From NCBI RefSeq assembly GCF_000150275.1, contig NW_002060946.1, positions 2,189,454 through 2,253,453 of the forward strand: DNA of 64,000 nt, written 5' to 3'. The notes under the pieces were generated by a model that saw only the letters and a program-made list of their open reading frames with translations, had not been told where the DNA came from and ran no database searches. Below, one piece after another: positions 19,501 to 56,569 of the stretch. The DNA is from Trichoplax adhaerens (lineage: Eukaryota > Animalia > Placozoa). A program made the translations under genes and the position numbers. Every line of letters begins with the position of its first letter. Position 1 is the stretch's first letter.

Positions 19501-20163
19501 GCAATTTCCTTTGGGTTGACATGTTCGTTGAAGGGCAATAACTTGATTCGGATTAGAAAATTTTACAAAATTAACCACTAATTCCATTCGGCTCTGCGCG
19601 GAGACATGCTAAAATCCATCGGGAACAAAAGGGAGGAAAATAATCTTTAGAAAGTCATCTTTGATGATAAATTTCAATCTATTAATGGTTAGACAAAATT
19701 AATGCCGGCACATATATAAAAAAAAGCTTAAATTCATTATATGCCAGCAGACTTTACGGCGGTTTAAATAAATGAAATTTTAAGAGTAAATTTAAAAGGT
19801 GATGCAATCGGGAACAAAGGGAACATGATTTTCAAAAATAGAACGACGATATAGACAATAGACGTTCACACAGAATAAAAAAATTTCGATGGGTTATATA
19901 ATTTCCGTTAATGTAATAACGTTTGCCTTTCTGTTATTGAATTAGATATGAAATCTTTAATAATGCGGTTATTAAATCTCATGTTAACAAAAACTATTAA
20001 TGAATGATTGTATCGATCTTTCATTTAACTTAATTATCGTCGATTGACGTAGACATTGGATCTTGTATTGTACGTAGAAATAGCATTCAAAGTTATTATT
20101 TCAAATTACCTTAACTGGCAAGCTTAATATCAGAGTAGACAATAGGAGGATAAGGAACTTCAT
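13549..20163 (-). CDS. Cluster gene A: secreted Delta-like-head protein (SP - MNNL/C2 - reduced DSL - 4 EGF - 5 FN3 - laminin G)
   Basis: Exons (approx.): 20163-20110 (MKFLILLLSTLILSLPVK); 19608-19348 and 18295-18105 (C2, ending CVLGYRGSRCDQ); EGF exons 17521-17467, 17340-17283, 17191-17121, 17034-16971, 16865-16804, 16641-16471; FN3 exons 16329-16012, 15830-15527, 15439-15123, ~15009-14694, 14611-14294; LamG 14200-13907 and 13820-13549 (GLIFF..WYH..TVNG..YIGG..GFHGCIKRVSVN..C). GT-AG, phase-consistent; no TM helix. Confidence 0.85.
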
Positions 20164-29300: not shown

Positions 29301-32300
29301 TTTACAGTATAGGTATAGGGCACTGTAAATACTGTTACGTTAGCATTTTCATCCTTCATTAATATTGGTATCACAACTTACACTACAAGTATTTCATTCA
29401 CCGAACGATTGAAAAGGGATAGAGATAATGATTAAACGTTCATGATCTGTAGTGAAATAAAATTTATTTCTGATTTAATCAGAGATTAAAATCAAATTAG
29501 TATCATTTTGTGTTTTAGATTTTTTAGTGTACTATTGAGATATAGAGGAAATTCTTATAGTTTTCAATATTTGCTCATTAAATGTTATTTTATGAAATAC
29601 AGCAATTTGCAGTACTGGATGTAGTCCAATTCATGGGACTTGCAAAAATTCTCCGAATACTTGCAGGTATATTAATCAAGGCTAAGTTCACAATTTTTTC
29701 CAGTTTACTAAAGTAAAGCCAAGTAAATGTTTAACAATTAATTGGAATATAACAGTAGGCCATTGGACTAGAAGATTGTTATTATATATAGTTCATAAAG
29801 AAGTATCATTTTAGCCATTTTACGAATATCCATAAAATATACTTCCGTTACTAAACTTTGATACAAACACATATCACGTTTATCAGTGTAGAACTAATTT
29901 CTGAAATGTATGTATCTCTGTGTTATAGCTGTAATAGCGGTTGGACAGGATCAACCTGTGAAACTTGTCTCAAGCGAACTGACTGTGGTAAGGTGCTATA
30001 GAAATAAAATAGAGGCTGTCAGGATAACAAGTTTATTTACAGTTAAAGTATACCCTAATAAAGTGTTAGCGGTTATAAAGCATTCCATGCTTAAACCCAA
30101 ATTAGTTTTAAAGTCATTTTTTCGTTCTATATCGGTTTAGTAAATGGTAATTGTCAACAGGGAAATGATTGTGTATGTATATCAGGTTGGCATGGCTCTT
30201 TGTGCAATATAGGTGAGATTATTTCCGTATTCTAAAATGAGCCATTACGTAGTGCAAATGGTAATGCGTAATTCTTTTGTTTATACGTTTGCTTAATCTA
30301 TGATCGTTTTCGTTATCAATTGCAGCCAATTGCTCGACAGAATGTCAGCGACATGGGCGTTGCATGGAACCTAATCGTTGCATGTAAGTTGCAAAATCTT
30401 TATTTAAGGAGAAGAGATGCTGATACAATTTAGGATTAAAGAAATTTAATACCTTTTACTGAAGACAATTATGACTCCTGCCATTTTTAAACTCACGCTT
30501 TATTACTGGCCTAATTCGTAATGGACTACACGATATTAAGAATTTTATTCTATTCTGATTATATTACAGCTTAAAGATTATAATAGTATGCGAGAACAAT
30601 ATGGCAGTTATCATCACAATAATGCTTAGTATTTATTGCTGTATGTGGAATGATAGTAAATTAGACGCAATATTACAATGCTTACTTACTGTATGCATGC
30701 TAATAACAAACATATAGCTATCGATACGCTAAGAAATATAATATTTCGTACCAGAAACCACGCACTATTTTCGCTTCGAGTCATAATTAAATCGAAACTA
30801 CCATTGAAATCATTCTTACTCGGTTGATTTCTTTAGCTGTTATCTAGGATGGACTGGGAATAACTGTGATACCTGTTTGAAAAGAAGTGGATGTTCCGGT
30901 GAATTAATACGTTCCTGTCTTTTACATTTAATGCCATACTGATGTTTTATTGAATTTCAGTAATTAATAAGGAAAATATCTAATGCAGCTGTAAAAGTAT
31001 CTCAAATTTAATTTTGATATATTCGTAGAAGAATACGACGTTAATATTTCAACTACTCAATAGTGTCATTCGTACAGCAGATATAGGTGCCTTTAACTAC
31101 TTTAAATTTAGTACAGTGATATCTGGTATCATCCTGTTTGTCTCATATCTTCTTTCAATAATAATTAATACCATAATTTAACAATATTATCAGAAAATGG
31201 ATATTGTGTGAATGGGGATGATTGCGTTTGCAATGAAGGTTGGGATGGTTCAAATTGTGACCGAGGTAATAATCAGATACGTACCAGTATTTGTTTATCT
31301 AATATTACACTTGTTTTCATCAACGAATATAATCTTGAATGCCGTTTGGTATGCTATACCAGATCATTTATATGCTACCTCCCTTACCTAAACTTTATAA
31401 TCAATGTTCACATAGCGCTTCGAAACGTCCTAATAAATAATTTATAATTTGATTATAGATTTACATCCGTGTGCTAACCCGAGTCAGTGCGCAAATGGAG
31501 GTACTTGCATAAGGCTAGGAACAAGTCAATTTCAATGCAATTGTATGGCCCAATTTACTGGTAGCCGATGTGAATATCGTAAGCACAACCGTATTCTATA
31601 TGGCTTTCGCTTAATGTAATTGCAATTAGACAATTTTACACCATGCCAGGGAAATAATTGAGTATCAGTATTCTATTGCTAAGACAAGTAAATTTTTAAT
31701 CTGAATTTATAGTAAAGGTAATTACATCAAGTACTACTGCTCCTATACGAACAATATCTAATCCACAGCTAACATCCACCGTAACACCGACAGCTGAGCA
31801 AATTAGCACAGGTAGTTACTTGATAATGGAATAGCAATTGAAAAATTAGTTCTTAGGATTTAACTTACAATTTCAAAAACTGGCATTTAATTTTTATTGT
31901 ATATTATCTACCGTTGGATCAAATCAGGAAAAATTACAGAAATAATCTCCACAGCTTATTCAACAATTACCAGTACTTCCGTTAGGTCCACGAAAATTGA
32001 AACGACTAGCTCAATGAGGACTACCATCGTAACGAATTCTTTGCAATCTGCTACAAAAACTACTGAAAGATATGAAACAGCTATTACATCAGCATTTATT
32101 TCAACAACGCTTACTCAAACATCATCTACTTTAACCATGTTCACTTCAATACCATCTACTTCAGACATATTTACTCCAACATTATCTACTTCAGCCATGT
32201 TTACTTCAGCTTCATCTATATCAACCATATCTACCCCAGCTACACTAACCCCAACATCATTTATTTCAACAACTCAAGCAGTAGTTGATTCTACAATCTC

Positions 32301-33293
32301 GAAAAGCCCGACAGTATTTACTCCAACATCATCTACTTCAACTCAAACAGTATTTATTTCAACATCTAAGAACCCAACAACATTTACTTCAACCACTCGA
32401 GTAGGTACTACTGTATCTACAACTACTGGGGGATTGCCATCACAGCCTCAGATAATTGGTATAATAGAAGGTGATGATCATTTAAATATTTCGTGGTCAG
32501 CATCTACCAGTACTACAAACGACTTGATCATGTACTATATCCGATACGAAATACGAACTGGCAAAGATGAAGATAGTTCGTGCCCAAACTGCCGAAGTAC
32601 ACCAAAGGTATCTCGATTGTACCATTTACTTGATGGGCTACCTGGAAATACGCCTTATAGGCTTAAGGTTATCGCGGAGAACAGCGTAGGAGATAGCCAG
32701 AGTCAATTCAGATTTGCTAGAACTAAAGGTTTGTTTTCTAACATAGTCGTTATAACTTATATTGTTTTATATGCTAAGCTCGTATGCAGTAATTCACATT
32801 ATGTACGAATTATACGATTGCGTACAGTTTAATTTTAGTGCCTAGTCCTTATAATCATTAGAGTGTATCTTATCTTTTGATTATTGCAATTTCTATGTAT
32901 TAATTATACAAGGCAATGGGACCCCAGGAGGAATTTCAGGTGGCACTTATGGAGCCATTGCAGGAGTAATTGGAGTATGTATCTTAATAACAGGAATTAT
33001 CATTGCATATATCAAATTACGTAAAAAACCAGGTGAGCAACGCTATTGTAAGACATAAGTGGCATATTATTATGATTATGGCAGGATTTTGCCAATTTCT
33101 ACGATTAAAGTCTGAATATTTAATCGATCAACAAATACATAAAAATGTAACAGCGGTCAGATATAAATTAACTGAAACTGTTTAATTAAACTTGCTTATA
33201 TTTGCAGCGGATGACCACCGCAGGATAGAAGATCATCTGTACGACCAAGTTTACGAGTTTACTACGGCATCATCGCAAGTGAGATATGGTTAA
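26360..33293 (+). CDS. Cluster gene B: type I membrane Delta-like-head protein (SP - MNNL/C2 - reduced DSL - 5 EGF - Ser/Thr mucin stalk - FN3 - TM - short Tyr tail)
   Basis: Exons (approx.): 26360-26416 (MMTQQVSRLLFILCLVLIQ); 27802-28080; 28213-28432; EGF 29603-29666, 29929-29987, 30141-30212, 30325-30383, 30837-30898, 31194-31265, 31459-31578 (DLHPCANPSQCANGGTC); 31713-31811; 31928-32728 (mucin + FN3); 32913-33032 (TM YGAIAGVIGVCILITGIIIAYI-KLRKK); 33208-33293 (DHLYDQVYEF...YG*). The last exon could alternatively splice at CAA|GTGAGA. Confidence 0.87.
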
Positions 33294-41130: not shown

Positions 41131-44039
41131 GTCGTTTGTTCTTGCATCATTCAATGATTACCAGCGCTGTTGACGATGCAATGTTTAATGTTATGGTATT
41201 ACATAGATTAGCTACGATATGAATAAGGCAGGTTAAAAGATACTGTATCTCGAGTGAACTAGAGCCGCATTTTACGAAGTTTGCATTTAACTTGACTCTC
41301 TCTTTTGATTAGTCCAGTATTCCAGTTTTCCATCCAGTGAATAATTAGCAATAGTACAGTTTAAGGTTGCACTTTGTATGTGAATTAATCAGATGATAAT
41401 TGTGCTTTCGTTGAGTGAATCAGGATTAATTTCAAATGGCACTATCTGTGAATCAGTCATTAACAAGTATACTATGGTCTAGTGAACAAATTAGGAGTAG
41501 TTTAAGGCTGTACTTTGTCTGTAAATTATATCACCTATTATAAATAAACTGTGCTATGGATCCAATGAAATTGCGTATCAGTCATTTTGACACAATAAAC
41601 TGAAGGTAAACGAAGGACTTTGGAAGGAGCCTTTCTCTCTCTGTTCCTATTACAGTCCATTTCTATTTGATCTGCACAGATCTTGGGTTTATATTGTCAC
41701 TAAATCACTGTGAATACTTGAAAATATGGGTAAAATGAATAAATTATGTTTCATTTTTTTTGCCCGTAGCCAACAAAAATAAATGAAGCCATCGCGTACT
41801 TCCACCGCACCATCACGTGATCATGGCTGCGGACATGCGGTCGTGGTTGCTTTCCCGTCGTGAGTTGAGCGTCATAGAGAGACTGTTGACTGTGCAATGT
41901 TGTCAGTCCAGTGAGGGTGTGTTTTTAGTCATCTGTAGTACCACTTGGACGACTGTAGGCTGCGAACGTAACCATCAAGCACGTCAGTTGAAGACGCGTC
42001 CGTCGGTGTCCTGTCGCTCTTGTTGCTGACGCCATTGAAAATCTTTTCTTGCCCATTGACTCTTTCCAATATTTCCCAATTTTCTTGGCTATTGCAGCAG
42101 TTGTGTCGTTTAAAATCAGCTTTTACTTGTTGGACAAACTTAATAGTAGTATTAAATGAGCTACTAGCTTGCCATTGACCGATATTCATATCAAACTTGG
42201 ATCAACAATGGTAGGTAAACTTTGGAACTTGGTCTTACTGATGTTAATCGCCGGTCATCTATCTATAAATCAAGTAAGTTTTCACTGCTCAATAACGCTA
42301 ATATAAATCCATTACTGGAAAAGTTGTACAACTTGAATGTACTGTATATTGTAGTGGAAGTGGATACAGAGTATCTCAATATATTCTTCATGCTACGTAT
42401 ACCAATACCTTTGAGGGGGGAAAAAATGAGAGAGAAAAATATTACGAAATTTCAACAATCATGAGAAAGATGAATTGTGCCTTTCGTAACATTTTGCACG
42501 ATTTTTTCCTCCCCAAAATAGTCGTTGCATCCAAGCACCTACTCAGTAGATGACGATATATGTTTGTCCGTTGATACCTTTCCAAATGGACGTCGTTGTT
42601 GACGTCAGTGAAAATGGTCATTATTACACAGGTTGAAACTTTCTATAGACAGAATGGTACTGTGCTATGACTGCGATAGATGGATATAAATGTTGATTGA
42701 GGAGGAAATTAAAATGATTATAATCGCTCTCCTTATTTTTAATTTTCCTATCATTACTGTTTCAAGCTTTCGACAATTGAGTCATTTTATAAGCTTAAGT
42801 TGAGTGGCTTTGATTGATTGACCACCGCATGTTGTTACTACATTAAATGAAATGAAAAATTGGTGACAATACTAATGCAACAACATCAATATGGAATGAA
42901 TTAATTAACACTTACCCAGCATTTTATTGGCCAACAACGGCAAATTATGGAAGAAAAATATTTCCAAGGAAATCCATGAATGATAATACCTTACTAGTCA
43001 TTCTAATTACGGGTAATTAATGAATTAATTCATTGGACATTATGAGTAATGGCAGTTTACAAATAAGGAATGCTATCATTCCATGGATGGTTGTCCTAGG
43101 CATGAAAACGATTGCAACTCATGATAAGATAAATTACATATTATTATTATTATTAATCCATCAATTAATCATACTCCTATGAAGGAACTAGCTGTTGACG
43201 CATACAATGATCATGACAAGAACGAGCATAGACACTATTTCGTAATTTGAAGTCAGTTGCGATGGTGTTCTATCCTTTTGTCACAAGTGGATTAGTAAGT
43301 TCCTTTTAAATAGGATTGCAACCATCAGAACGATCTTTTATCGCTGAACACAAAAAATACGAAATTAAACTATGTTCATGGTTGAAACCATGTACTAATC
43401 GCATCGAGAACTGACAATGTTTTCGAAAGGCAAGAGGAATAGTTTTCAAGCCAGTGCTTATTTTTTATACTCTACTGTAATTTTCTATTTCCACTCCAGT
43501 GATGATTTAGTAAGTCACGGTACTGTATCCGTCGCATGTCAACTTTCTGATATCTATGGTAGCGGCTTGCATGGAATTTAGTCTTAAGTGTACCATCCCC
43601 ATAAATGCTTTACTTGGTTGAAATGAACGACGTAAATTAAGCTAGAAAACTGGATGATGTTGCCAACTTGAGAAAGTAAAAAATGCAAACTATACGTTGT
43701 TGCCAAGTACGCAATTCGATCTTACTTGTACAATACGTGGAAAAATCGGAAGTCAGACTGCCTGTCTTAACATTTGGTACAAAAGTAAAAATAATTCTGG
43801 TTTCGAATTTACCAACTTGACATTTATCGTAGAAAGCATTCTCATTAATACAAGGCTATGAGCTTCAGCTTGAGAATCCTTTAATTATCGCATAATGATG
43901 ATAAATATTTAATATGTTCGTTGGCCTTAAACCATCTTCATTAGTGAAGGGATAGATGCTACAACATTTTAAAATTTTAATCAAGGTTTATATTTGGAAA
44001 ATTGAAGGTAATTGAGAAGTTTAGATAGAAGTCGTGTAG

Positions 44040-47000
44040 TGGCTGACAGCTGGTAGTATTGCAGCAATATTAATAATCTTAATCTCAATGTGTACTGTAA
44101 GCATGAATTATCCGGAAAAATCTTGAGGTATTCTTTATATAATTATGTGCCAAACCGCGTGAGACGGTATTAGAAATCAAAATCAAGTACTGTAGTTGAA
44201 ATAAAAGGATGTATCCTACCTTTCCAACTATATTAAGTTTTTTTATGCACATAGTACGGTAACTATTCTGCTAACTACGATAATTACTAAATTTTCAACG
44301 TTGCTCTTGGTCATCAATCAAATCATGCACGTAAAATTACTATGAATGCGTTATAGTTATAATTTTAAGCGATAAGGTGATACATACGAGTTACTTGTGA
44401 ATTAATTTAAGAACATTTACAACATATATATTAGTAGACGATGATTAGTTACTGACTAAAGTAAGCCATACATATACTTTACTATTCGCTTTGATCTTTC
44501 AGGTAAATTGCCAATATTCTACTCGTGCCAGACTGATGTTAGAACTGGTCCAATATTATAATCCTAATGAAAGACTTTATGATGGAAGGAAATGCGATGT
44601 ATTTTCCGCGTGCGATTACGTTTTTGAGATAGCAATTGGCACATCTGGTCGAAATAATAGTTATTACTCCCTCGTAACCAATACCTTTGAAAATGGCCAA
44701 TACATTCAGTTCTCATCAGGAACAGCGCTGGCATCCAATGTTGGAAATCCAATTAGGGTTCCTATTCTTACGGCATTACCGGTAGGCTATGAAAATATCA
44801 GGATATTTGATTTCAAGTACTGTAATTATGCATAACCGATACACAAAAGTGTCATTTGTTTTTGTTAATAATCTGTTACATTGCTATAAAATTTTAGCCT
44901 TATTACCAAGTTAGTACCATCATCATTGATTGGGTATTGCTTAAAATTTGGTAGTTGATGATACAGTACTTCTCGTCAAGACAGGTATACCGCTATTACA
45001 AATTACTTTTTAACCGTGCAGTGCAGTATTTTACTACATTACCAAATGTATGGTAGTAGTGGTTTATTATTAGTTCAAATATTATAACGATAGCATACTA
45101 CAGTACGTGTAGCTCCTGGTCTGCTAACGATAAACAATTATAAAGAACACTAATTTATAGCATGCTCGGATTGATTACCATCACATAATTTATTCGAATC
45201 ATTCATTATATTTAAGACAGCAACAGTGTAATGATTTTATATCTTAAATGAATTTACTATCTTATTCCAAAGGCATCCGAATCGATACAATTATCTATCA
45301 TCGTCAAAGACAACGAATTCAATTCGAAATTTGAAATTGTGGATTTTTTACGCTACTATAGCGACGCACTATCCGGAACCTCATTAAATAATCTAGTTAT
45401 TACTGGTACACGAACTAAAGTCAATCCATCCAAATTAACAGTCAACTTTAAGATAGAATGTGGGACTGGCTGGGAAGGCCCCAAATGCGATAGAGGTACA
45501 TCGACCGTATAGTATTAAAATTATCTTAGCAGTACTATAATTTGACAGTAGCAAAACTTCATTTTAAAATAGTCCAATAAAACTTTTGAATAAACTTAGT
45601 TAAATACTACCAATGTTACTTGTCCTAATGTTAAGATTGAAATATTTGTACGTAATTATTTTTAATCTTTATAAAATAGTGCAACAAAATTTTTGAATAA
45701 ACTCAGTCAAATACTACCAATATGTACTTGTCCTAATGTTAAAACTGAAATATTTGTATGTAATTATTTCAAATCTTTATAAAGCTATCTGCCGCTCAGG
45801 CTGTAGCGTTACGCGTGGTTCATGTAACAATAGTCCATTTACCTGCAGGTAAGTTTTAAAGCCTATAGCACTATCAAATTGGTATTCTTGTTGACTATTT
45901 TCTTTGTAAAGGATAAGATCTAATAGAATTGTACTTTTGCTCAGTTTCACTTTTGTTGCTGTACATATATTGTATGAATAAATATCATTAAGCCGTTCTC
46001 ATCATAAAATATGAATAGTTGCAATCCTGGCTGGACTGGATCAACATGTGATTCTTGTATAAAGTTATCAGGCTGTGGTAAATCATATAGCTAAGATCAT
46101 TTTTATTTTTTTCAATGAATATTTAATGCAGGCTTCTTAGAGATTATGTAATCTTTCATCTACATTAGTGCTTTTATTGGACACATTGACGTGGATGTGT
46201 AATTTGTAGTAGTAAGAATTAATTTATTTTAATGAACTTCAATTGCATGTTGTTTTTTAGTACATGGCTATTGCCGCCTTGGAAATGATTGTACCTGCAG
46301 CACTGGTTGGCAGGGATCGTACTGCAATATAGGTGCGTAAATAGTTGCTGGCGTTGAGTTATATTATAAAGTTTATGAATGATGTTGTCCATAAAAATAC
46401 TATTAGAGCCTATAGTGGTTTGAGTCTTTTCAACGAATTGGATGTATTACAGCTAAAACTCTAGTTTATCGAATTAATAATTTGCATATGTTATATGATG
46501 CTCTTTAACGGTAATCATTGTTGCTATTTTCAAGCGATATGTTCCGGTGGATGTAATGCTGAACATGGACGGTGTGCCTCGCCAGATAAATGTTTGTAAG
46601 TTGAAATTGATGTGTGATAAAGTAGTTATAGCAATTTGTAAACTGCTACAAATTTAGTTACGCTCTCTCTCATATGATCGTAAGTATACTTTTTCTCTCT
46701 GTTACGTTCGGTAATGATTAGCACTCCATAGCTTAACTGAAGCATAACTTATGCTGATATTTGTTTTCAACTCGAAATAGATGTGACTCTGGATGGACTG
46801 GTACAAGCTGTGATACTTGTATTAAATCGCCACACTGTTCAGGTATGAACTAACTAGTATCGCCACCTTTATACCCTATTTACTCTTAATATCGTAAGAC
46901 ATGTCAATAACGACGGCATGGTATATACTGTACTTGTTCATCCTAACTTTGATTAAATTCTTGAAGCCTGTCTTTGTTTTCTATGTGTAAAATAAAAATG

Positions 47001-50000
47001 TCTGCTTGAATTAGAATTACATGGTTATTGTCTCAATGGAAACGATTGTCTCTGCCATGATGGTTGGGGTGGTCCAAATTGTGATAAAGGTACGGATTTA
47101 GAAGCTTTGGCTTCGCGTTATTAAATTTGCGATATAATAATTACAGCTTATAATGCTTATAAAATTGATTTTGTTACGTAAAATAACATTTAAATCCTTT
47201 ATCGCAATTAACTCAATAAGTACTCGTATTTCGACATGGGATCTCTTAATTGGTTACCTTTATCAATTTGTTTTCTTTACTTATTAACGATTGTATTAAA
47301 ATTTTATTAACATTATGCGATTTTGAATTAGCCGAATAGCTTATCGCCCGTATTTTATTCTAATTTTATCATTTAATTACTGTATGTTTAGACTTAAATC
47401 CATGTAGTAACCCTAATCGTTGTAAAAATGGTGGTACATGCCAGCGTTTAGGAATAAATACCTATAGGTGCAACTGTCTACCAAGATATACTGGAGGTCA
47501 CTGTGAATATTGTACGTTAGTCATTTAAATTATATGGCTTTTAATATTTTGTTGTCAATGCTACTTTGGTAATTATCTTGAGCAAAACTTCTATGTCAGC
47601 ATATATTTACAAACTATTTGTTTGCTGTTTTCGACAATATGTTTAGCGCCACCTGATAAGCCTCAGGTACGAAATATTGCCATCAATGCTACACAAATAG
47701 CGATAACATGGGATAAATTCCAATCAAACGGTGGCTACCCTTTAGTTAAACTATACTTTCGATTAGACTATTATCAAGTTAGCAGCTTCGGCAGCCCCGT
47801 TTTCGGCACTAGATCTTCATCTAGCAACATCTCTTATGAAATTAACGAGGCCACCATTTCTCACCTACTGCCCGTAACCTATTATAGTGTTAGCGTTATC
47901 GCTTTTAATGGAATTGGTAAGAATAGCAGTTCGTGGAGGAGAGTAAAAACTATAGGTTATCCTCCACACCCTCCGATCATTAATAGAATAGTTACAACAA
48001 TGAATGCTATCGATATTGAATGGAACATTACATCAACTGGGGGTTATGATATTTCGGAGGTTCAGAGTTTCCTTGAATATCAAAAATGGTCAGATTATTT
48101 TGAAAATCGAGAAAAGGGTTTGACTAAGATACTTCTTCATCATTATCAATATCGAATTGACAAATTGCAATCAAATACTGGCTATAGATTGCGTATTACC
48201 GTAAAAAATCCTATTGCTAAGCGTTCTTCTATATGGATCAACGAAACCACTTATGGTATGGCTAGTTAAGCTTTGTACTTTATTGCTTATATTTCGTGAC
48301 ATAATTACCAGTACAATGTATCACAAGTTTGCTGCGCAAGCAGTTTTTAAGTAAATAGCGGAAGAGTTCCAATTTCACTATGGTGTTCTCTCTGAATTTC
48401 ACATTTTAAAGAATCTATTTAATTTAATTTATTTTACAGGTGTCCCTGGTCTTCCAATTATTTCTAGTTTAATTAGTACCTCCACGACTATAATTGTTCG
48501 TTGGTTACCATCTCCCTCAAATGGTGGTTATACCATGTCGAACTTATCATACAATGTAGAATACTTGCAGGCTGATGGCTATCAAGAACGTATTTGTCCA
48601 AGATGTACAGTTTCGCCATCAGTTAATAACGTTTACTTTCTATTAAATAAACTAACGATTGGAAGTCCCTATGTAATAAGAATTAAGGCAACTAATCCAG
48701 GAGGAGAAAGTTATAGCAGTTGGAGAAGAATGTCTACAAAAGGTGTGTAAGTAGTCTTGCGTTATGGGCTTGATATTTTTAAGTACAAGAATGGGCAACT
48801 AAAAAATGAGAAATCTCCTTTATCAGGTGGTCCCTGGTACATAGTGTATAGAAGTACTTCGTAAAACAACTGATTTATTTAAAAAAGTAACGGTTTAACA
48901 AAATTCAGATTCCTGTTATAGAATCCTTGAGACGTTTTATCACGCTAACATTATACTTACGGTATAACCTGCTAATTACTTTATCTAGCTTTTGTGTATA
49001 TAAAGTTGACGTAGTATTAGAACATTGTCATTGTAAATTTTTATGTAATAAGTCCTTATGCTCTATAAATATTCTTATCTAAACTTTCACTCCCTGTACA
49101 TATTTGTATCGAATACTACGGTATCATCATGGTTTGATTCATGTTTGATTGGGTTTTATCTTTAGGATATCCGCGTAACGTAAAAATTGATCAAGTCTTA
49201 CGTAATTCTACATCACTAAATATCACATGGTTTCCAGTCGTTGATAATGGCGGTTACAGTTCTTCCAGTCTCATATATTTTATTGAATACATCAACAAAT
49301 CCAGTCCTTTCAGTAATAGCCAATCTAATTGCGATGCTTGTAAAAGGACAAACAATGTTACTACAACTTTTGTAGTAGTATATAGATTGACAGTATTGAC
49401 AGAGTATTATGTTCGGTTACATGCAATTAATCCAACAGGAGACTCAAAATCGTCGTGGCAAAGTACGACAACTTTAGGTCAGTTCTTTAATCTAGATCAC
49501 ATATAATATCTTTACAGATTTTCACGCTATTTCTTCTACTCGTGTAACAGGTATGCGGATAGCTAAATATTACTACTTTCAAATAATAGTCGTATCTCAT
49601 TGCAATAGCCAAAGCTTAAAGCAATGTAATCAATAGGAATTGTCGTTATTTAATACAACAGTATTAGTATTAAGATTATCTATCTATTTTGGCTTTAGTC
49701 GTTAAATGCTTTGCAAGTTTATTCAGAAAAGTGTCTGGATTCTATCCTTTTAGCAATTTCTTGACAGGAACTCTAACATCAGGCTATTATTTGTATAGTA
49801 TCAGTAATTTAATTTATTAGTATGTCTAAACGTTGTATTACATGAGTTAAATGTGTAAATCGTTGGTAATTCATGAACTCTCCTATGAGTTTATCAAGCT
49901 GATGTCGTTTATTTTTCTAATAGAAAAAGTATTCAAACATAAAGTACTAAATACTTGCTAAATTATGCCTTTTCGCTACTAACAGCTTGCTTTTGTAAAA

Positions 50001-52808
50001 TTTGGTTACAGGATACCCTCCTGATGCTCCAACAGGTATTACAATTGTAGCCGATGCGCAAAGAGCCACGATCACATATAAAAGAATCAAATATTACGGT
50101 GGTTATAGTTTAGGAAGCATTACGTTTTATGCCAGATATCTCATCAATAACGGACAAGTGCCTAATACTGATTGTACGAACTGCTATAAGAGGACTTATG
50201 GTACAGAATCTTCGATTCAATTAACTGGTTTATTGGTTGGTACAGTTTATTACATTCAAGTTGTTGCAGCTAATGAAGCAGGGCAAAATGCCAGTCATTG
50301 GGAAAGATTCACAACGAAAGGTTATCTTTGAAATTGTATAATCGTATAACGATGTATATGTGCTTTACAGATCTAATTTTGAATCTAATATTATGCATTG
50401 ATAAATTCTTATGTACTTCTGTTTACAGGTAAACCAAGTTCAGTTACTGGCATTAGAATTACTGTTTTACCCTCGGGGGTTATAATTACATGGGATCATC
50501 CAGCGTATACCGGAGGTTACGATCATTCACAAATCACTTACTTTGTTGAATACGGTGTTGCTGGTACAGGCAGTGATGGGTGCCAAAGTTGTACGACTAT
50601 CCCTACAAATAGAAATACCACTGTGACTTTACGCGGTTTAGGGAGCTCAAGAGAATATCGAATACGCGTCATAGCAAATAGTCCAGCAGGCGTTTCAGCT
50701 AGTAACTGGACATCAGTGTGGACAAGAGGTATCAAAAATTGTTATACGAATGTTTTTAGCCACGCATTCGTAATTATTAGGTTGTTCATAAACTTGCATT
50801 GCTTTGTTATGTACCCTATGACTGTTACTTATTGCTTTTAAATCATGACGCTCAATACGATATTTTTTCTTATAATGAGGCATTACACATCGTACGTTAT
50901 GCATTATAATTTCTATTTATGATTCTGTGTATGCGTTTATGAAATATATTTTGTTCATATTTTGCTTATCACGACACCATTGTTAGCATTATACTTGCAT
51001 GCACGTAATGGTTTAATACTGATTGTTAATAAATCAATACTGTCATTTCTATCATTATATGATATGTAATGACGTCGAGGTGTTCTTCTCATTTCAAATC
51101 GGATAGATATATGTTTTGGACTAACAGATTCTTTATTACTTATTGATTGTTCCAATGGCTAATAACATTGACTAATTTTCTACTGAACGTTAATAGGTGT
51201 TCCTTCCGCTCCATCAGACATATTAATTGGAAATATTACCTCAACTTCGGTTTTAATTAGTTGGACTGCTGCTAAAAGCTACAATGATCAGAACTCAACT
51301 GATGTTGCTTACCGTGTCAAATATTCCATTCATCGTATGCGTGACATTAACTGTAGCTTTTGTCGCCTTACTTCTCCAACTTGGCGTACATTTATAGTAC
51401 TAACAGGATTAGAATCTTACACTGCTTACGATATTTCTGTTGTTGCTTCCAATAATCTTGGCAGTAAATCTTCTACTTGGTTTCGATTTGTTACTTTAGG
51501 TACGCGAAAAGTATACTAGATCATACTGCAGTTGATCATAATAATTGCTCGCTGTTTTGAATTAATGAAGAATTGTTATACCTCTTTAAATCATTTTCGC
51601 AGGTCAACAACCACAAATGCCACAAATTATTAATACAGAGGCAACATCGTCCTCAATAACAGTTAGATGGAAGTTACAAGACTACAATGGAGGGTATGAC
51701 ATGAAACAACTATCGTATTATTTGCAGTATCTGGCGGGAGAGGAGTTACGTGAAAATTCAACCTGTCATGCATGTCATAATACTTCAATCACGCAAGCAA
51801 ATCATATTCAAATCGCTGGTCTGTCACAAAACACCCGGTATAATATTAGGGTTGTGGCTGTTAATCCCGCAGGGACAAGTGTTAGCAAGTGGATGAAAGT
51901 TTCTACTACAGGTGTGTTTGTATGAAATGGTATGTGAATAATGCGCTAACATAGCTAATTTATATAAATATTAGAGTGATTTTATTATGGGTTGATGAGA
52001 TGCTTTCAGCAGTGCATAATAACAGTTAGTCTTGTTTATAATTTGTGCTGTAATATTATAGGCCTTCCAGAAAGACCCACAATTGTCAGTACTACAGCTA
52101 TCGATTCGTCTTTGATTATTCAATGGAATAAATTATCTTATAACGGTGGTTATCCTGTTGAAAATGTAATTTTTTACGTGCAATACAGCACCAAGGAGCA
52201 ACAGAGCAACAGTAGTCATTGTCAATTATGCCTACTAACTCAGCCAGTTAGGAATATCAATGTTACTGTAGGTGGTTTGAATCATTTAACGTTATATTGG
52301 ATTCGCGTTCTAGCTGAAAACGTAGTCGGTAGAAGTTATAGCCGTTGGCATCAAGCATGGACATTAGGTACTGTGTTACTATGATCGAATCCCTATTTCT
52401 AGAATGCAATTATTTTGTGTTACTTAATAGATTTCAGGCGAAGTTAATCAAACATGAAGTTACGTTGATTTTCTTATTAATCATTAGGTTATCCTCCTGG
52501 CTTAACTTCAATCACTTCTTCTTCCTCTACTCCTTACTCAATTTTTTTGACTTGGAGAGAAATCACTGATAACGGATTATATAGCATAAATGAATTAGTT
52601 CTTTACGTTCAATATGTCACAAAAGACTTTAAGACTCAAGATTGTAGATATTGTCATCGTGTAAATACTACTTCAGCAACTTCAGTCGTCATTCCGAATT
52701 TAATATCTAATACTATTTATAAAGCTAGAGTTATTGCTCAAAATACCGCTGGAAGTACTAAATCAGCATGGAAAGATATAGCGACAAAAAGTAAAGCAAC
52801 TTACATTC

Positions 52809-52843
<35 letters not shown>

Positions 52844-55800
52844 TATACACGTATGTAACAGAATTCGATACGTATAAACTTACGAATTGTTATTTTTGGG
52901 GAATTACTTTAGATTCCATACACTCTGGCATAGAATTCAATGTGATCAAGGTTACATCTGAAACAGCCACTATAAAGTGGACTGTAGAAAATCCAACAAA
53001 CCGTCACCCTCACACTTTTACGATAGAATATGTACAATCTAATATTCCTGTCTCTGGCTTAATTTGTTTACACTGTCACAAAGTAGTGAATCTCACTATC
53101 ACTCAGTATCAGCTGGTTAATTTATCGATAAATACGATTTATAAGTGGCGAATTAAGGTTTACAGCCTTCAGGAAACCAATATTACAGACTGGAAACAAT
53201 TTAAAACTACAGGTATATCTACAGTAATTTCCCTTCTTCTGAAATTAGTATGATATTAGTAAATAGTTAGATTCATACATTAGCTTAAATGTCTATAGTG
53301 TAGTGTACCTTTATTGAATCTCTATGGTATGCAAGAGAATTATCAAATTTGATTATTACAATTTTGTGATAATAGCAGATATTGTTTGAAGTTTTTTCTC
53401 CGCTTAATATCGACATTATATTTATTAATTCATTAAAGCATTTAGTCATTAAATTTTATGAGTTTTGAGAAGCATTTACTAAAGATAGTAACTCGTCATT
53501 CTAAATGTTTTCATTAAATTGAAAGGTCCTCCTGATAAGCCACATATTATCGCTGCAACTACCAACAGTTCGACAGCTGCAATTACCTGGACTTCCATTG
53601 ATTATAATGGTGGTTATGATAGAAGTCTTTTAGTCTATTATGCTCAATATACGAATAGGGAGTTACACGATGATGATTGCTTGCAATGCATGCGGTCTAG
53701 AAATATTACGGTAACGACTGCTGCAATTAAGAATTTAAATAGTAATTCAAATTACTGGGTGAGGATTATCTCGCATAATCCAACCGGCAAAAGTTACGGG
53801 AACTGGATGAAAATCAAGACTAAAGGTAGGTCATGAGATTGTCAATGTTAGGCTTAGGGTTATGTCTACATTTTCTATAGCTGTTACTTAATCACTCTCA
53901 ATTTCACCCTAGTCTTATTAAAAAAGTTAATTATAAATTTGCTGTCAAATTATCGCAATGGAATCTGTGGATAGACGCAATAAATTTATTAGTTTGCATT
54001 GTAAAAGGAAGTTTTCAACATAAGAAAAATATGAAAATATAATAAGACTGTATAAACACTTATACGGCTTTTGTAATTATACCGTATCATTTAACATTGA
54101 CGATGTCACATGTGTGAACAATACTTCTGAAAATCTTGTTAACTAATAGTTACGATCATGAGAGTCCATGATTTTAATTAAATTATAATTAGTCTCATGT
54201 ATGTAAATCTTTGTAGGATTACCTGATAAGCCGAAAATAACTAGTATCGTAAATAGCAACATCACGACAATTCTAGTCGATTGGGATCCCATTCGGTATA
54301 ACGGTGGCTACGACTTATCATTAGTAGTATACTATGTCATATTTGGTCCAAGTGTAATGGACGGTGGCATCCCAAGTCCATGTGAAAAGTGTAATCGAAG
54401 TTTGAGAACGTCCGGGAGTATGGCCATGTTAACATCGTTTATACCGCATACTTATTATAGTTTTAGAGTTGTGGCGAACAATGTAGTTGGCAGTAGTAGT
54501 AGTCCATGGGAGTATTTTAAGACTAGAGGTAAGTGAGTTTGATAGTCAGCAATGTCTCTAGAACATATGTCAAGTATTAAATTTAAAAAATATATTTTTA
54601 CTCATTACTATTGCGTTCGTACAGTACTAAAAGAGCAATACGTGTATTAAACATTTCCATTTCTTGTTTAGGTCTAGCTCCAAATCTCTTGAATATTAGT
54701 AGAATCATAGTAACAACTAATTCGATAGCTATATTTTGGCAATTACTATTCTCTGGTGGCTATCCTATAGAAGATATAGAATTTTTTATTCAGTATATCG
54801 AAGGACAGTGTCAGGAATCCTTTAATTGTACATTGTGTCAATTTATTAAGTCTGAAAATTGGTCATCCTTTACTATTAATCAGTTACCCTCAAACACCAA
54901 TTTTTGTTTCCGAGTAGCAGCATCAAACGAAATTGGAACATGCTACAGCCAGTGGATAAGCAGGCGGACTTTAGGTATGAAAAATTTATAAATGTACGAA
55001 TTGTTAGTAATATTTATTACCGCAAATTGTTAACGATATATTTCAACGTAAAAACGGAGAACGCTCGCCTACTATAACTCTAAAATTGAAAAAATGTTCT
55101 TGTTTATGCTCACGAATGAAATAATAGAGCCTACAGTATCAACAACAAAAATATCGGAAACTACGAGTATAATCACTCAAAGTCAACCGACCCTTGGAAG
55201 TACCGCGCCAGCTACGTCACTGGCAACTACTAAGTATTCAATCTTTCCACCTATACCTCATGTTACAGCAGTTGAGGGAGGTTGGAATTATATAAATATT
55301 TCCTGGATATCGCTAAAGAGAACAATTGATCCATCCACTTTTTATTTTATACGTTATAAAGAGCAAGTTGACGAGAATATGACTTGCTACGATTGCCTTG
55401 AAACATCGGCAATTTATCAACATCACTACTTGCTAAAAAATCTGCGGAATGATACAATTTACTTAATTCAGGTGGTAGCTAAGAATATGAATGGAAAAAG
55501 TTTTAGCGCTATAGTTCAAGTAAAAACAAAGGGTAATTTATATATGTCGAAACTTTAATGTATCTACTTTACTTGTTATAAAAACTTTAATAGATTAATC
55601 ATATTGGATTCTTAAACGCATATGATAATAATGGCTCTATACTTTAAACGAAGGCGATTTAAGCTTGTAATAATAATGCTGCTTTTTTTTCATTAGAATA
55701 TCTCTTTCAGGTGAAGTTTACTGTAGTTATGACTGTAGAAAATTTATATCTTATCTTTTTTAGACATCATTTTATTATCAGCCTACAATTGTTAGACATA

Positions 55801-56569
55801 TAGTACTTTTATAGGTCTAGAAATACACGCTAAATTACAATTTCTTAACACGGTACTCCTGATTAACTATTTTACTAAAATATTAAACTAAATCAATCCT
55901 ACAGCACCACCGCAATCAATCCCGGCCGTACGTACATGGCTTGGACCGATATTAGGTGGAGGAGGAGCAGCAATCGTTCTTATGATAGTAGCTGTAATTT
56001 TTTCTATTAAGATTATAAGAAAGCGAGGTATGAGTGATTTCGTTTCTTCTAACTTTGATTGCACAATTAACTATCGTAAATTTTTCAATCAGACTAATTA
56101 AAGGCTAATCCAGGATAAATTAAATTAATATACATATTGATATTCACTTAACATTTGAATATAAAATTTTATCTATTAAGGGGCATTATTATCTGGCAAC
56201 CAAAAGAATAAGCAACGGCAGCAGGATTCAATCTATGAAGAAATTGACAATTTTACTAATGTTTTATACGAAAGTGGATCAACACTTGGCTTAAAAATAA
56301 AGAATGATACAGGTACAGATTTACCTACAAATATCACTCCCGATAGTCCATTCAGACGCCAAGCAAGTAGTATCAATTCAACAACGACGTTGCTTACAGA
56401 TAGTGGAATATTTCATTGTGGGGATGATCAAAACAAACCGAAACCAGCGTTTAATCATACACCTGGAGTTCCGCAGTTACAACGATCACTGTCTGATGAT
56501 GAATGTTATAGTTACATGTATAGACAGCGTAGTAGAGCTAATACTGCAGAAGATTCATCTTTATTATAA
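44040..56569 (+). CDS. Cluster gene C: type I membrane Delta-like-head receptor (SP - MNNL/C2 - reduced DSL - 5 EGF - 15 FN3 - TM - ~135-aa signalling tail); start codon not located
   Basis: Exons (approx.): 44040-44096 (WLTAGSIAAILIILISMCT); 44503-44781; 45273-45495; EGF 45785-45848, 46019-46077, 46261-46332, 46536-46595, 46781-46842, 47014-47088, 47391-47511; FN3 47647-48256 (two domains) and exons starting ~48440, 49166, 50012, 50428, 51196, 51603, 52041, 52488, 52913, 53525, 54217, 54672, 55129; TM 55906-56027 (WLGPILGGGGAAIVLMIVAVIFSI); tail 56181-56569 ending DSSLL*. Confidence 0.87.
45566..45782. repeat. Intronic tandem duplication, ~108 bp x2
   Basis: AAAATAGT..TTTTGAATAAACT.AGT.AAATACTACCAAT..TACTTGTCCTAATGTTAA..TGAAATATTTGTA.GTAATTATTT..AATCTTTATAAA occurs twice in tandem. 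Confidence 0.9.
52811..52840. repeat. (TA)n microsatellite in a gene C intron
   Basis: Directly visible TATATA run. Confidence 0.95.

What the first reader, a model, noticed from the sequence alone, without database searches (positions are those of the whole stretch)
45273..47511. DSL domain collapsed to a single disulfide unit and DOS EGF pair doubled in all three paralogues
Seen: after the last C2 strand each gene has only CGTGWEGPKC (C), CTEGWQDSKC (B) or CVLGYRGSRC (A). This is followed by [AIC..GC...HG.C...P..C.C..GW.G..C..C....GC.HG.C....DC.C..GW.G..C] twice, then DLNPC..C.NGGTC in B and C. Known: the canonical DSL domain runs CxxxYYGxxC-xxxCxPRDDxFGH-xxC-...-CxxGWxGxxC, its central part contributes to Notch binding, and DSL-less DOS proteins (DLK1, nematode OSM-11) act as non-canonical Notch modulators. 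Inference: deletion between the two similar ends of DSL, or a pre-DSL state, gave C2 + 2xDOS proteins that could be co-ligands, decoys or Notch-independent.
Basis: partly seen in the sequence, partly recalled or inferred. Interest (0 to 1): 0.8.

Follow-up and report, generated by a model that had tools for sequence, protein, structure and literature searches.

The report
Delta-like heads lacking the DSL core
Three neighbouring Trichoplax genes encode long membrane proteins tipped by a Notch-ligand head (C2 domain plus Delta-type EGF pairs) whose Notch-binding DSL domain is cut down to one small disulfide loop; the variant is conserved in placozoans, appears undescribed, and its function is untested.

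Summary
The window is Trichoplax adhaerens. Genes A (minus strand), B and C each encode a C2/MNNL-like domain. A single C-x8-C loop follows it, then two tandem copies of a Delta/Jagged-type EGF1-EGF2 module.

There is no hidden DSL exon:
- The three introns hold no Cys-rich frame.
- The Trichoplax sp. H2 model of gene B splices the loop straight to EGF1.
- The genome's one canonical Delta encodes its whole DSL in the same exon as the C2 end, between the same introns.

- Pfam does not call MNNL or DSL on these genes. The C2 identity rests on a profile search, paralogue links and a predicted fold.
- The strict DOS consensus is not met.
- In gene A the first pair has lost one disulfide.
- The proteins are not small ligands. 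They carry 1 to about 17 FN3 domains, a mucin stretch or a LamG domain.

The same loop occurs in three Jagged-like genes elsewhere in this genome; the scan noted one of these earlier (s1-747284). All six genes form one placozoan clade, with orthologues in a second placozoan under purifying selection.

Best reading: a derived, placozoan-specific offshoot of Notch ligands, formed by an in-exon DSL deletion plus duplication of an exon block. Its function is unknown and probably not canonical Notch activation.

The parts
42208..42273 (+). Gene C, putative signal-peptide exon (22 aa, ends ...INQ, GTAAGT donor)
   Evidence: Inferred by analogy with gene B's exon, which is confirmed by model P0151.
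44503..44781 (+). Gene C exon 1: N-terminal half of the C2/MNNL-like domain; ends ...LP with a phase-0 donor
   Evidence: BLASTP to the Jagged-like paralogue exons gives E 4e-18, 9e-20 and 1e-10. Two of those exons pass the Pfam MNNL cut-off. A profile of the six exons finds canonical MNNL+DSL proteins. Pfam itself has no hit on this exon.
45273..45495 (+). Gene C exon 2: C-terminal half of C2 plus the single C-x8-C loop, then a phase-1 donor
   Evidence: No Pfam family hit.
45459..45488 (+). The loop CGTGWEGPKC, the only remnant of the DSL in gene C
   Evidence: It scores 19.2 against the DSL Cys5-Cys6 loop matrix and 7.3 against the Cys1-Cys2 matrix.
45496..45784 (.). Intron after exon 2 of gene C: no coding potential, 23% GC, 2 x 108-bp tandem repeat
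45785..46332 (+). Gene C, first EGF1-EGF2 module in three exons (45785-45848, 46019-46077, 46261-46332)
   Evidence: Junctions read. Half-exon Pfam hits are EGF_DL_JAG E 4.6e-5 and JAG1-like_EGF2 E 2e-4. It is 49% identical to the EGF1-2 of the canonical T. adhaerens Delta.
46535..47089 (+). Gene C, second EGF1-EGF2 module in three exons (46535-46595, 46781-46842, 47015-47089), with the same intron phases as the first
   Evidence: It is 57% identical to the first module and 53% identical to canonical Delta EGF1-2.
47392..47511 (+). Gene C classical EGF (DLNPC...NGGTC), the counterpart of Delta EGF3
   Evidence: Pfam EGF E 4e-7. The equivalent part of gene B aligns to DLL1/JAG1 EGF3.
47647..55555 (+). 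Gene C stalk: about 17 FN3 exons
   Evidence: ORF list. Pfam fn3 E 5e-10 on the first exon.
55892..56566 (+). Gene C transmembrane exon and cytoplasmic tail (contains a YEEI motif)
   Evidence: hydrophobic stretch, then a basic stop-transfer sequence. No Pfam hit.
26360..26416 (+). Gene B signal-peptide exon
   Evidence: Identical to the start of P0151.
27802..28432 (+). Gene B exons 1 and 2 (27802-28080, 28213-28432): C2-like domain plus the loop CTEGWQDSKC at 28396-28425
   Evidence: In the AF2 model of P0151 this part has pLDDT >90. Its best Foldseek matches are the C2-EGF3 structures of DLL4, JAG1 and DLL1.
29603..31600 (+). Gene B: two EGF1-EGF2 modules and one classical EGF, in seven exons
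   Evidence: phmmer of P0151 against the PDB gives DLL1 4e-26 and JAG1 4e-21, against teneurin-3 5e-15.
31891..33055 (+). Gene B Ser/Thr-rich mucin stretch, one FN3, transmembrane segment
18103..19608 (-). Gene A exons 1 and 2 (19342-19608, 18103-18276): divergent C2-like domain plus the loop CVLGYRGSRC at 18112-18141
   Evidence: The orthologue in L020 keeps C..GY.G.RC.
16571..17522 (-). Gene A: two EGF1-EGF2 modules; EGF2 of the first has lost Cys 1 and Cys 3
   Evidence: dN/dS is 0.20 against the orthologue.
13552..16339 (-). Gene A: five FN3 exons and a laminin-G domain
   Evidence: Pfam Laminin_G_2 E 9e-5.

Best explanation
Genes A, B and C are a placozoan-specific offshoot of the Delta/Jagged family of Notch ligands.

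Proposed origin (inferred from anatomy, introns and the tree):
- An in-frame deletion inside the exon that encodes the C2 end plus the DSL removed everything between DSL Cys 1 and Cys 5. One C-x8-C hairpin was left.
- This happened once, in the ancestor of six Trichoplax genes: three Jagged-like genes on another contig and A, B and C here.
- In the ancestor of A, B and C, the exon block encoding EGF1-EGF2 was duplicated in tandem. The block is bounded by phase-1 introns on both sides.
- The resulting head was joined to FN3, mucin or LamG stalks with a transmembrane anchor.

Proposed function (inferred, not shown):
- The deleted part carries the RDDxFGH loop, whose Phe is needed for Jagged-1 to bind Notch.
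- The proteins are therefore most likely no longer canonical Notch activators.
- I take them to be cell-surface recognition or adhesion receptors. They would present a C2 (membrane/lipid-binding type) plus EGF head on a long stalk, and in gene C would signal through their own cytoplasmic tail.
For: Organism and models: P0003 is TRIADDRAFT_55383. P0151 is RDD43841.1 of Trichoplax sp. H2, identical over the head.

C2 identity:
- Exon 1 of gene C matches three paralogue exons at E 1e-10 to 9e-20. Two of those pass the Pfam MNNL cut-off.
- A profile of the six exons finds 204 proteins at E<=1e-3 among 1.84 billion. They include MNNL+DSL proteins of Nematostella, Saccostrea and Owenia.
- The AF2 model has pLDDT >90 over residues 23-190. 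Its top Foldseek matches are DLL4, JAG1, DLL1, JAG2 and fly Serrate/Delta C2-DSL-EGF structures at E 1e-13 to 9e-20, followed by generic C2 domains.

EGF identity: PDB phmmer ranks DLL1 (4e-26), JAG1, DLL4 and JAG2 above WIF-1 and teneurin (about 5e-15). Pfam EGF_DL_JAG scores 43 bits, over its cut-off. The pairs are 43-53% identical to the canonical Trichoplax Delta EGF1-2.

Gene structure: three intron positions and phases are identical to those of the canonical Delta. One is the phase-2 intron inside the C-S-C of EGF1, which is also conserved in human JAG1 (PMC2725086).

No hidden exon.

The loop resembles the DSL Cys5-Cys6 loop.

Single origin: all six genes and their orthologues form one clade (SH-aLRT 96) that excludes the canonical Delta.

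The genes are functional: A, B and C each have an orthologue in a second placozoan-like genome. dN/dS is 0.20 over 128 codons.

Loss of binding: JAG1 F207A, in the deleted loop, abolishes Notch-1 binding (PMC3888931).
Against: - Pfam MNNL does not hit the window's own exons or P0151. The C2 call therefore rests on remote homology and a predicted model, and that model's alignment contained canonical MNNL sequences.
- The direction of change (loss versus never gained) is not settled. The tree is unrooted, has 105 columns and was made with a quick search.
- The Jagged-like nature of the three paralogues rests on weak VWC hits and on a motif I recall from memory.
- The loop also resembles any EGF Cys5-Cys6 hairpin, and the matrices were trained on only 15 DSLs.
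- No expression, binding or localisation data were available, so the functional half is inference.
- Retention and duplication of the EGF1-2 module under purifying selection could equally mean that a Notch-related role is kept.
Confidence: 0.6

Rival explanations
1. Same origin, different function. The heads still engage Notch in a non-canonical way, through the C2 site and the doubled EGF1-2 modules. They would act as co-ligands, cis-inhibitors or decoys, in the manner proposed for DSL-less DOS proteins such as DLK1 and OSM-11.
For: - The C2 domain and EGF1-2 modules are the other parts of the receptor-binding region of Jagged-1. EGF1-2 are needed for full binding (PMC2725086 discussion).
- Both are kept, and the module is even duplicated, under purifying selection.
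- DLK1 EGF1-2 were reported to bind Notch1 EGF12-13 in two-hybrid assays (PMC2504490).
Against: - The strict DOS consensus is not met.
- The DSL loop whose mutation abolishes Jagged-1 binding is absent (PMC3888931).
- The stalks of 1 to about 17 FN3 domains, and a tail with its own motifs, look like a receptor rather than a ligand or decoy.
- Trichoplax has a complete canonical Delta with both a DSL and EGF1-2, so no bipartite ligand is needed.
Confidence: 0.25
2. Ancestral state. The six genes descend from a Notch-ligand precursor that never had a DSL. In this view C2 plus one hairpin plus ex6-like EGF units is the 'primitive precursor' predicted by Pintar et al. 2009, and the DSL arose in a sister lineage by divergence of a duplicated hairpin+EGF unit.
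For: - phmmer aligns the hairpin of EGF1 plus EGF2 of the first module onto the DSL of DLL1, Cys for Cys except for one disulfide. This fits the proposed kinship between the DSL and the exon-6 unit (PMC2725086).
- The six-gene clade lies apart from the canonical Delta in the tree.
Against: - Sponges, cnidarians, bilaterians and Trichoplax itself all have full DSLs (PMC2770060). The relic lineage would therefore have to be lost everywhere else.
- The intron flanking the loop is the same intron that flanks the complete DSL in the canonical gene. That fits an internal deletion with no other change.
- Three of the six genes look Jagged-like, and Jagged elsewhere has a DSL.
- Reduced or absent DSLs arise repeatedly elsewhere, for example P0119, P0126, P0065 and P0085.
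Confidence: 0.1
3. Not Notch-ligand relatives at all. They would be teneurin- or tenascin-like EGF/FN3 matrix or adhesion proteins, as the public annotation 'Teneurin-a' implies, with an unrelated N-terminal domain.
For: Pfam EGF_TEN scores 86 bits (cut-off 65) and EGF_Teneurin scores 47.6 bits on P0151. EGF+FN3 is the tenascin layout.
Against: - There is a signal peptide at the N terminus and a C-terminal anchor, not the type II topology of teneurins.
- There is no NHL, YD or Tox-GHH domain and no fibrinogen globe.
- Solved Notch ligands outrank teneurin by about 11 orders of magnitude in E-value.
- The N-terminal fold matches Notch-ligand C2 domains first.
- Intron positions are shared with Delta.
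Confidence: 0.03

Closest known systems
Canonical DSL ligands (Delta, Serrate/Jagged), including the single canonical Delta of Trichoplax adhaerens (contig C1403)
   Same: - N-terminal C2/MNNL domain.
- An atypical EGF1-EGF2 pair with a two-residue linker, then a classical EGF beginning DLNxC.
- Type I membrane topology.
- Three shared intron positions and phases.
   Different: - The DSL is reduced from six cysteines (three loops) to two (one loop). The RDDxFGH Notch-binding loop is gone.
- The EGF1-2 module is present twice.
- The rest of the ectodomain is FN3, mucin or LamG instead of a run of EGFs.
- The C2 domain is too divergent for Pfam MNNL.
DSL-less DOS-motif proteins (vertebrate DLK1/DLK2, C. 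elegans OSM-11)
   Same: They lack a DSL while keeping EGF1-2-type repeats related to those of Delta/Jagged.
   Different: - DLK and OSM-11 have no C2 domain and no remnant loop.
- The strict DOS consensus is not met here.
- Those proteins are small or secreted, not long FN3 receptors.
Mammalian DLL3 and other ligands with degenerate DSL (for example the Rodentolepis 'Delta-like' P0065 and the metatranscriptome protein P0085, which has C2 + short Cys loop + fibrinogen domain)
   Same: They show that the MNNL/C2 domain can persist while the DSL degenerates or disappears, and that C2 heads get joined to other domains.
   Different: These are independent events in other lineages. None has the doubled EGF1-2 module or the FN3 stalk. 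DLL3 keeps a DSL-length region.
Three Jagged-like genes of T. adhaerens on contig C1409 (about 1.86-1.91 Mb)
   Same: The same C2 + single C-x8-C loop encoded in the same exon; nearest relatives of A, B and C in the tree.
   Different: The loop is followed by 20-40 classical EGFs and a VWC-like region. In one gene the EGF1-2-type pair lies after about 13 EGFs. There is no FN3.
Teneurins / tenascins (source of the public name 'Teneurin-a')
   Same: Tenascin-type EGF repeats (C..GC...G.C....C.C..GW.G..C); EGF+FN3 as in tenascin.
   Different: No teneurin or tenascin hallmark domains, opposite membrane topology to teneurins, a C2 head, and Delta-type linkers and introns.

Membership tests
DSL-family Notch ligands (Delta/Serrate/Jagged) | N-terminal MNNL/C2 domain | tested here: met
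   Met by remote homology and fold, not by Pfam. A profile search finds canonical MNNL+DSL proteins. There are links to Pfam-positive paralogues. AF2 plus Foldseek puts Notch-ligand C2 structures on top. Pfam MNNL gives no hit on the window exons or on P0151.
DSL-family Notch ligands (Delta/Serrate/Jagged) | DSL domain: six cysteines in three loops, with YYG and RDDxFGH motifs | tested here: not met
   Only one C-x8-C loop is present. No Pfam DSL hit at E<=1. No exon is hidden in the introns.
DSL-family Notch ligands (Delta/Serrate/Jagged) | Atypical EGF1-EGF2 pair directly after the DSL, with the conserved out-of-phase intron inside EGF1 | tested here: met
   The best solved relatives are DLL1, JAG1, DLL4 and JAG2. 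EGF_DL_JAG scores 43 bits, over its cut-off. The phase-2 intron in C-S-C is identical to that of the canonical Trichoplax Delta and is as described for JAG1 (PMC2725086).
DSL-family Notch ligands (Delta/Serrate/Jagged) | Type I membrane protein | tested here: met
   P0151 has a signal peptide and a C-terminal transmembrane helix. Gene C has a transmembrane exon and a tail. The C-terminal end of gene A was not found.
DSL-family Notch ligands (Delta/Serrate/Jagged) | Binds and activates Notch | not testable with these tools
   This needs binding and reporter assays. The EGF11/12-like repeats of Trichoplax Notch are split over exons, so no single reference existed for a complex model.
DOS-motif proteins (DLK1/2, OSM-11) | DOS consensus C-X3-C-X3,8-C-X2,5-C-[KVER]-C-X10,12-C-X1,3-P-X6,9-C-X1,4-W-X1,4-C (Komatsu 2008) | tested here: not met
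   The regex finds nothing in P0151. By eye there is C-S-C where C-[KVER]-C is required, and no Trp before Cys 4 of EGF2 (NDC instead). The canonical Trichoplax Delta departs in the same way. My set held no positive control.
DOS-motif proteins (DLK1/2, OSM-11) | No DSL and no MNNL domain | tested here: not met
   The DSL is absent, but a C2/MNNL-like domain is present.
Teneurins | Type II topology, eight EGFs, NHL/YD shell, Tox-GHH | tested here: not met
   Only the EGF_TEN and EGF_Teneurin models hit. The topology is type I. No other teneurin domain is present.
Tenascins | N-terminal assembly domain, EGF run, FN3 run, C-terminal fibrinogen globe, secreted | tested here: not met
   EGF and FN3 are present, but there is no fibrinogen domain and the protein is membrane anchored.

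The most novel reading that the evidence does not exclude
The six Trichoplax genes preserve the DSL-less precursor of Notch ligands that Pintar et al. (2009) predicted should exist: C2 + one hairpin + repeated 'exon-6-type' hairpin-EGF units. The DSL would then have arisen elsewhere by divergence of one such unit. In addition, A, B and C would define a new class of receptors that read neighbouring membranes or Notch through a ligand-type C2-EGF head and signal through their own tails.
Probability: 0.1. Interest if true: 0.8.

Novelty: new variant of a known kind. Interest (0 to 1): 0.55.

Why it matters
The origin of the DSL domain and of Notch ligands is an open question. MNNL and DSL are held to be metazoan inventions of unknown source (PMC2770060). 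Placozoa are usually credited with one Delta and no Jagged.

This genome holds six further genes with a Notch-ligand C2 head. In all of them the DSL is one hairpin, and three of them carry a duplicated EGF1-2 module on FN3 stalks.

This gives a natural experiment on what the C2 and EGF1-2 parts do without the DSL. It shows how the DSL relates to EGF hairpin units. It also corrects public names ('Teneurin-a', 'uncharacterized').

If the heads still touch Notch, the placozoan Notch system is richer than counted. If they do not, a ligand head has been re-used for another kind of cell contact.

Tried and rejected
- Pfam on single exons of B and C gave no MNNL and no DSL hit. The half-EGF exons tie between Delta/Jagged and teneurin models, so single exons cannot settle the EGF type.
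- An own-genome Pfam MNNL scan did not pick up the window.
- Looking up the contigs that encode the orthologous exon 1 of C and B gave only contigs of about 1 kb. The loop of C and B in the second placozoan was therefore not seen. Only gene A's orthologue was long enough (L020).
- The timing of the EGF-pair duplication could not be read from identities, because all comparisons fall between 0.53 and 0.61. It rests on shared copy-specific motifs and on parsimony.
- Pfam on the juxtamembrane Cys-rich exons of the Jagged-like paralogues gave only sub-threshold VWC hits.
- MAFFT places the loop on DSL loop 1 simply because the two are contiguous. That placement is not evidence.
- I prepared a complex model of the head with Trichoplax Notch but did not send it. 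The EGF11/12-like repeats lie in separate exons, and my report does not claim binding.
They were searched exon by exon, by reference. For gene B I used the database model P0151 instead.
- The teneurin/tenascin reading was rejected.
- An assembly or annotation artefact was rejected. Three paralogues, three more distant paralogues and orthologues in a second genome all show the same loop.

Full report
**What the window is.** The window is contig C1411:2189454-2253453 of a 105.6-Mb genome in 1414 contigs, with about 33% GC and short introns. A database protein identical to gene B is TRIADDRAFT_55383 of Trichoplax adhaerens. The fuller model RDD43841.1 of Trichoplax sp. H2 (P0151, 722 aa, named 'Teneurin-a') is 100% identical over the head.

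Three paralogues lie in the window:
- Gene A, minus strand, about 20.2-13.5 kb.
- Gene B, plus strand, 26.4-33.1 kb.
- Gene C, plus strand, 42.2-56.6 kb.

**The observation.** I read the junctions of gene C codon by codon.
- Exon 2 (45273-45495) ends the N-terminal domain, encodes CGTGWEGPKC-DR and stops at a phase-1 donor.
- Three exons follow. They encode an EGF with the frame AIC..GC......C......C-S-C..GW.G..C, a two-residue linker, and a second EGF with the frame C.....C.HG.C.....C.C..GW.G..C.
- The next three exons repeat this frame with the same intron phases.
- Exon 47392-47511 is a classical EGF that begins DLNPC.

Gene B is the same, with loop CTEGWQDSKC and DLHPC. P0151 shows the same order in an independent annotation.

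Gene A has the loop CVLGYRGSRC and two pairs. I first missed one short exon of the first pair, at 17280-17339. Its EGF2 has L and I where the orthologue has Cys 1 and Cys 3, the two partners of one EGF disulfide.

**No hidden DSL.**
- Pfam DSL finds nothing in exon 2 of A, B or C, in P0151, or anywhere in the window at E<=1. The genome has one strong DSL, on contig C1403.
- The three introns after exon 2 have 23-28% GC and no frame with a DSL-like cysteine pattern. Most of the gene C intron is a 2 x 108-bp tandem repeat.
- In the canonical Trichoplax Delta, the C-terminal half of C2 and the entire DSL lie in one exon (L015:7847-8110; DSL 70.9 bits).
- That exon is bounded by the same two introns as exon 2 of the window genes. 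The first is phase 0, after ...WP/...LP. The second is phase 1, two residues after the last Cys and one residue before the first Cys of EGF1.
- A separate DSL exon would therefore have no counterpart even in the canonical gene.

**The N-terminal domain is a C2/MNNL domain.** Pfam MNNL does not hit the window exons or P0151, so I tested the claim in other ways.
- An own-genome MNNL scan found the canonical Delta and two exons on contig C1409.
- Reading that region showed three Jagged-like genes whose first exons resemble exon 1 of gene C, with BLASTP E 4e-18, 9e-20 and 1e-10. Two of these exons pass the Pfam MNNL cut-off at 31 and 23.6 bits.
- I searched a profile of the six Trichoplax exons, without the canonical Delta, against 1.84 billion representative proteins. 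It found 204 proteins at E<=1e-3.
- The long hits include MNNL+DSL proteins of Nematostella, Saccostrea ('delta-like protein A') and Owenia.
- I folded P0151 with an alignment of these hits. Residues about 23-190 have pLDDT >90.
- Foldseek against the PDB ranks DLL4, JAG1, DLL1, JAG2 and Drosophila Serrate/Delta C2-DSL-EGF structures first, at E 9e-20 to 5e-13. Generic C2 domains follow, for example cPLA2 with a TM-score of 0.74 by target.
- Caveat: the alignment given to AF2 contained canonical MNNL sequences.

**The EGF pairs are Delta/Jagged EGF1-2, not teneurin EGFs.**
- On the whole protein P0151, Pfam gives EGF_TEN 86 bits and EGF_DL_JAG 43 bits, both over their cut-offs. This explains the public name.
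- phmmer against all solved chains ranks DLL1 (4e-26), JAG1 (4e-21), DLL4 and JAG2 far above WIF-1 and teneurin-3 (about 5e-15). It aligns the second pair plus the next EGF onto DLL1 EGF1-3, residue for residue.
- Each pair is 43-53% identical to EGF1-2 of the canonical Trichoplax Delta. The copies are 53-61% identical to one another.
- The intron inside EGF1 falls in the same AG|T serine codon between the two cysteines of C-S-C in Delta, B and C. This out-of-phase intron is the one described as conserved for human JAG1 exons 5 and 6 (PMC2725086).
- The strict DOS consensus of Komatsu et al. (PMC2504490) is not matched. The pairs have C-S-C instead of C-[KVER]-C, and no Trp in EGF2. The canonical Trichoplax Delta departs from the consensus in the same way.
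- I therefore call the unit a Delta-type EGF1-2 module rather than a DOS motif.

**What the loop is.**
- The DSL is three consecutive disulfide loops. Loops 1 and 3 are both C-x8-C hairpins.
- The first Cys of the window loop follows the last C2 strand, as DSL Cys 1 does. Its last Cys lies at the same distance from the phase-1 intron as DSL Cys 6.
- Position matrices built from 15 DSLs score all seven placozoan loops higher as loop 3 than as loop 1. For gene C the scores are 19.2 against 7.3.
- The simplest history is an in-frame deletion from just after Cys 1 to Cys 5, inside one exon.
- phmmer also aligns the hairpin of EGF1 plus EGF2 of the first pair onto the DSL of DLL1, with one disulfide missing. 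This illustrates the proposed kinship of the DSL and the 'exon 6 unit' (PMC2725086). It keeps the 'ancestral state' reading alive, at low odds.

**How widely it occurs.**
- The same C2 + C-x8-C arrangement, in the same exon, occurs in the three Jagged-like genes on C1409, with loops CCSQWTGSNC, CKSPYSGNYC and CINSWMGSLC.
- In those genes, 20-40 classical EGFs and a VWC-like region follow the loop. One of them has an EGF1-2-type pair after about 13 EGFs.
- The scan had already noted one of these genes (s1-747284).
- In a tree of the first half of C2, all six genes and their orthologues form one clade (SH-aLRT 96). The canonical Delta falls elsewhere. The tree has 105 columns, was made by a quick search and is unrooted.
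- A, B and C each have an orthologous exon 1 in a second, divergent placozoan-like genome.
- An 8.9-kb contig from it (L020) carries the whole orthologue of gene A. It has loop CPPGYSGNRC, both EGF pairs intact, five FN3 domains and a LamG domain.
- Over 128 codons of the EGF module, dN/dS is 0.20 with dS near 1. Introns do not align outside the exon edges. The genes are therefore under constraint.
- Outside placozoans the C2 domain also appears with reduced or missing DSLs and with foreign partners. Examples are a fibrinogen domain, or a direct transmembrane anchor. DSL erosion is thus recurrent.

**Whole proteins.**
- B: signal peptide, C2, loop, four Delta-type EGFs, one EGF, a Ser/Thr-rich stretch, one FN3, a transmembrane segment and a short tail.
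- C: the same head, about 17 FN3 domains, a transmembrane segment, and a tail of about 130 aa that includes YEEI.
- A: the same head without the classical EGF, five FN3 domains and a LamG domain.

**Mechanism.**
- Shown: the anatomy, the homology, the absence of the DSL core, and conservation.
- Inferred: the functional consequence. JAG1 F207, in the deleted loop, is required for Notch-1 binding, whereas mutating C2 calcium ligands (D140A/D144A) reduces lipid binding but leaves Notch binding intact (PMC3888931). The heads therefore probably cannot engage Notch in the canonical two-site way.
- I take A, B and C to be recognition or adhesion receptors that present a C2-EGF head on a stalk.
- A non-canonical Notch-modulating role is the main rival.

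**Literature.** Surveys of the Notch pathway credit Trichoplax with one Delta and no Jagged. They mention only an EGF+VWC gene (PMC2770060; PMC12166595). My searches found no description of C2-headed, DSL-less genes in placozoans.

I did not send a complex prediction with Notch (see Tried and rejected).

Noticed in passing
G000 contig C1409:1860001-1910000 (loci L010-L014): Three Jagged-like genes. Each has a C2 domain (two of the three first exons pass Pfam MNNL), one C-x8-C loop instead of a DSL, 20-40 EGFs and a VWC-like region. At least one has a transmembrane segment. Published surveys list no Jagged for Trichoplax.
   Followed up: partly
window 17118-17339 (minus strand): In T. adhaerens gene A, EGF2 of the first pair has lost Cys 1 and Cys 3 together. 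These are the partners of one disulfide. The orthologue in L020 keeps both.
   Followed up: yes
window 45565-45783: The intron after exon 2 of gene C is mostly a 2 x 108-bp tandem duplication (89% match).
   Followed up: yes
P0085 (JGI metatranscriptome, organism unknown): A protein with two copies of an MNNL/C2 domain, each followed by a short Cys loop (CMPGWCGPEC), and then a fibrinogen C-terminal domain. It is a C2 head without a full DSL from outside the placozoan clade. The Owenia protein P0063 has MNNL+DSL+fibrinogen.
   Followed up: partly
P0126 (370 aa, source unknown): An MNNL-like C2 domain followed directly by a transmembrane segment, with no DSL or EGF.
   Followed up: no
window 47647-55555: The FN3 exons of gene C share a conserved C..C pair and an NGGY motif, one FN3 per exon. 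The scan already noted this (s1-748264).
   Followed up: no
window 11639-12442 (+): A single-exon alpha/beta hydrolase ORF of 268 aa (Pfam Abhydrolase_1, E 4e-25). It lies just downstream of the last mapped gene A exon (the LamG domain), on the opposite strand.
   Followed up: partly
window 60482-61731 (minus strand): Exons of a class C GPCR (Pfam 7tm_3, E 7e-19 and 1e-17).
   Followed up: partly
window 855-2684 (minus strand): An open frame of 610 codons with no Pfam hit and a hydrophobic, low-complexity look. Its nature is unknown.
   Followed up: no
G000 contig C1413:4925279-4928700 (L028): The Trichoplax Notch gene has three LNR repeats and roughly a dozen EGFs. One EGF reads ECASSPC...C.CPTG.TG..C, which I recall (from memory, not tested) as the pattern of human Notch1 EGF12. 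The preceding EGF lies in a separate exon.
   Followed up: partly
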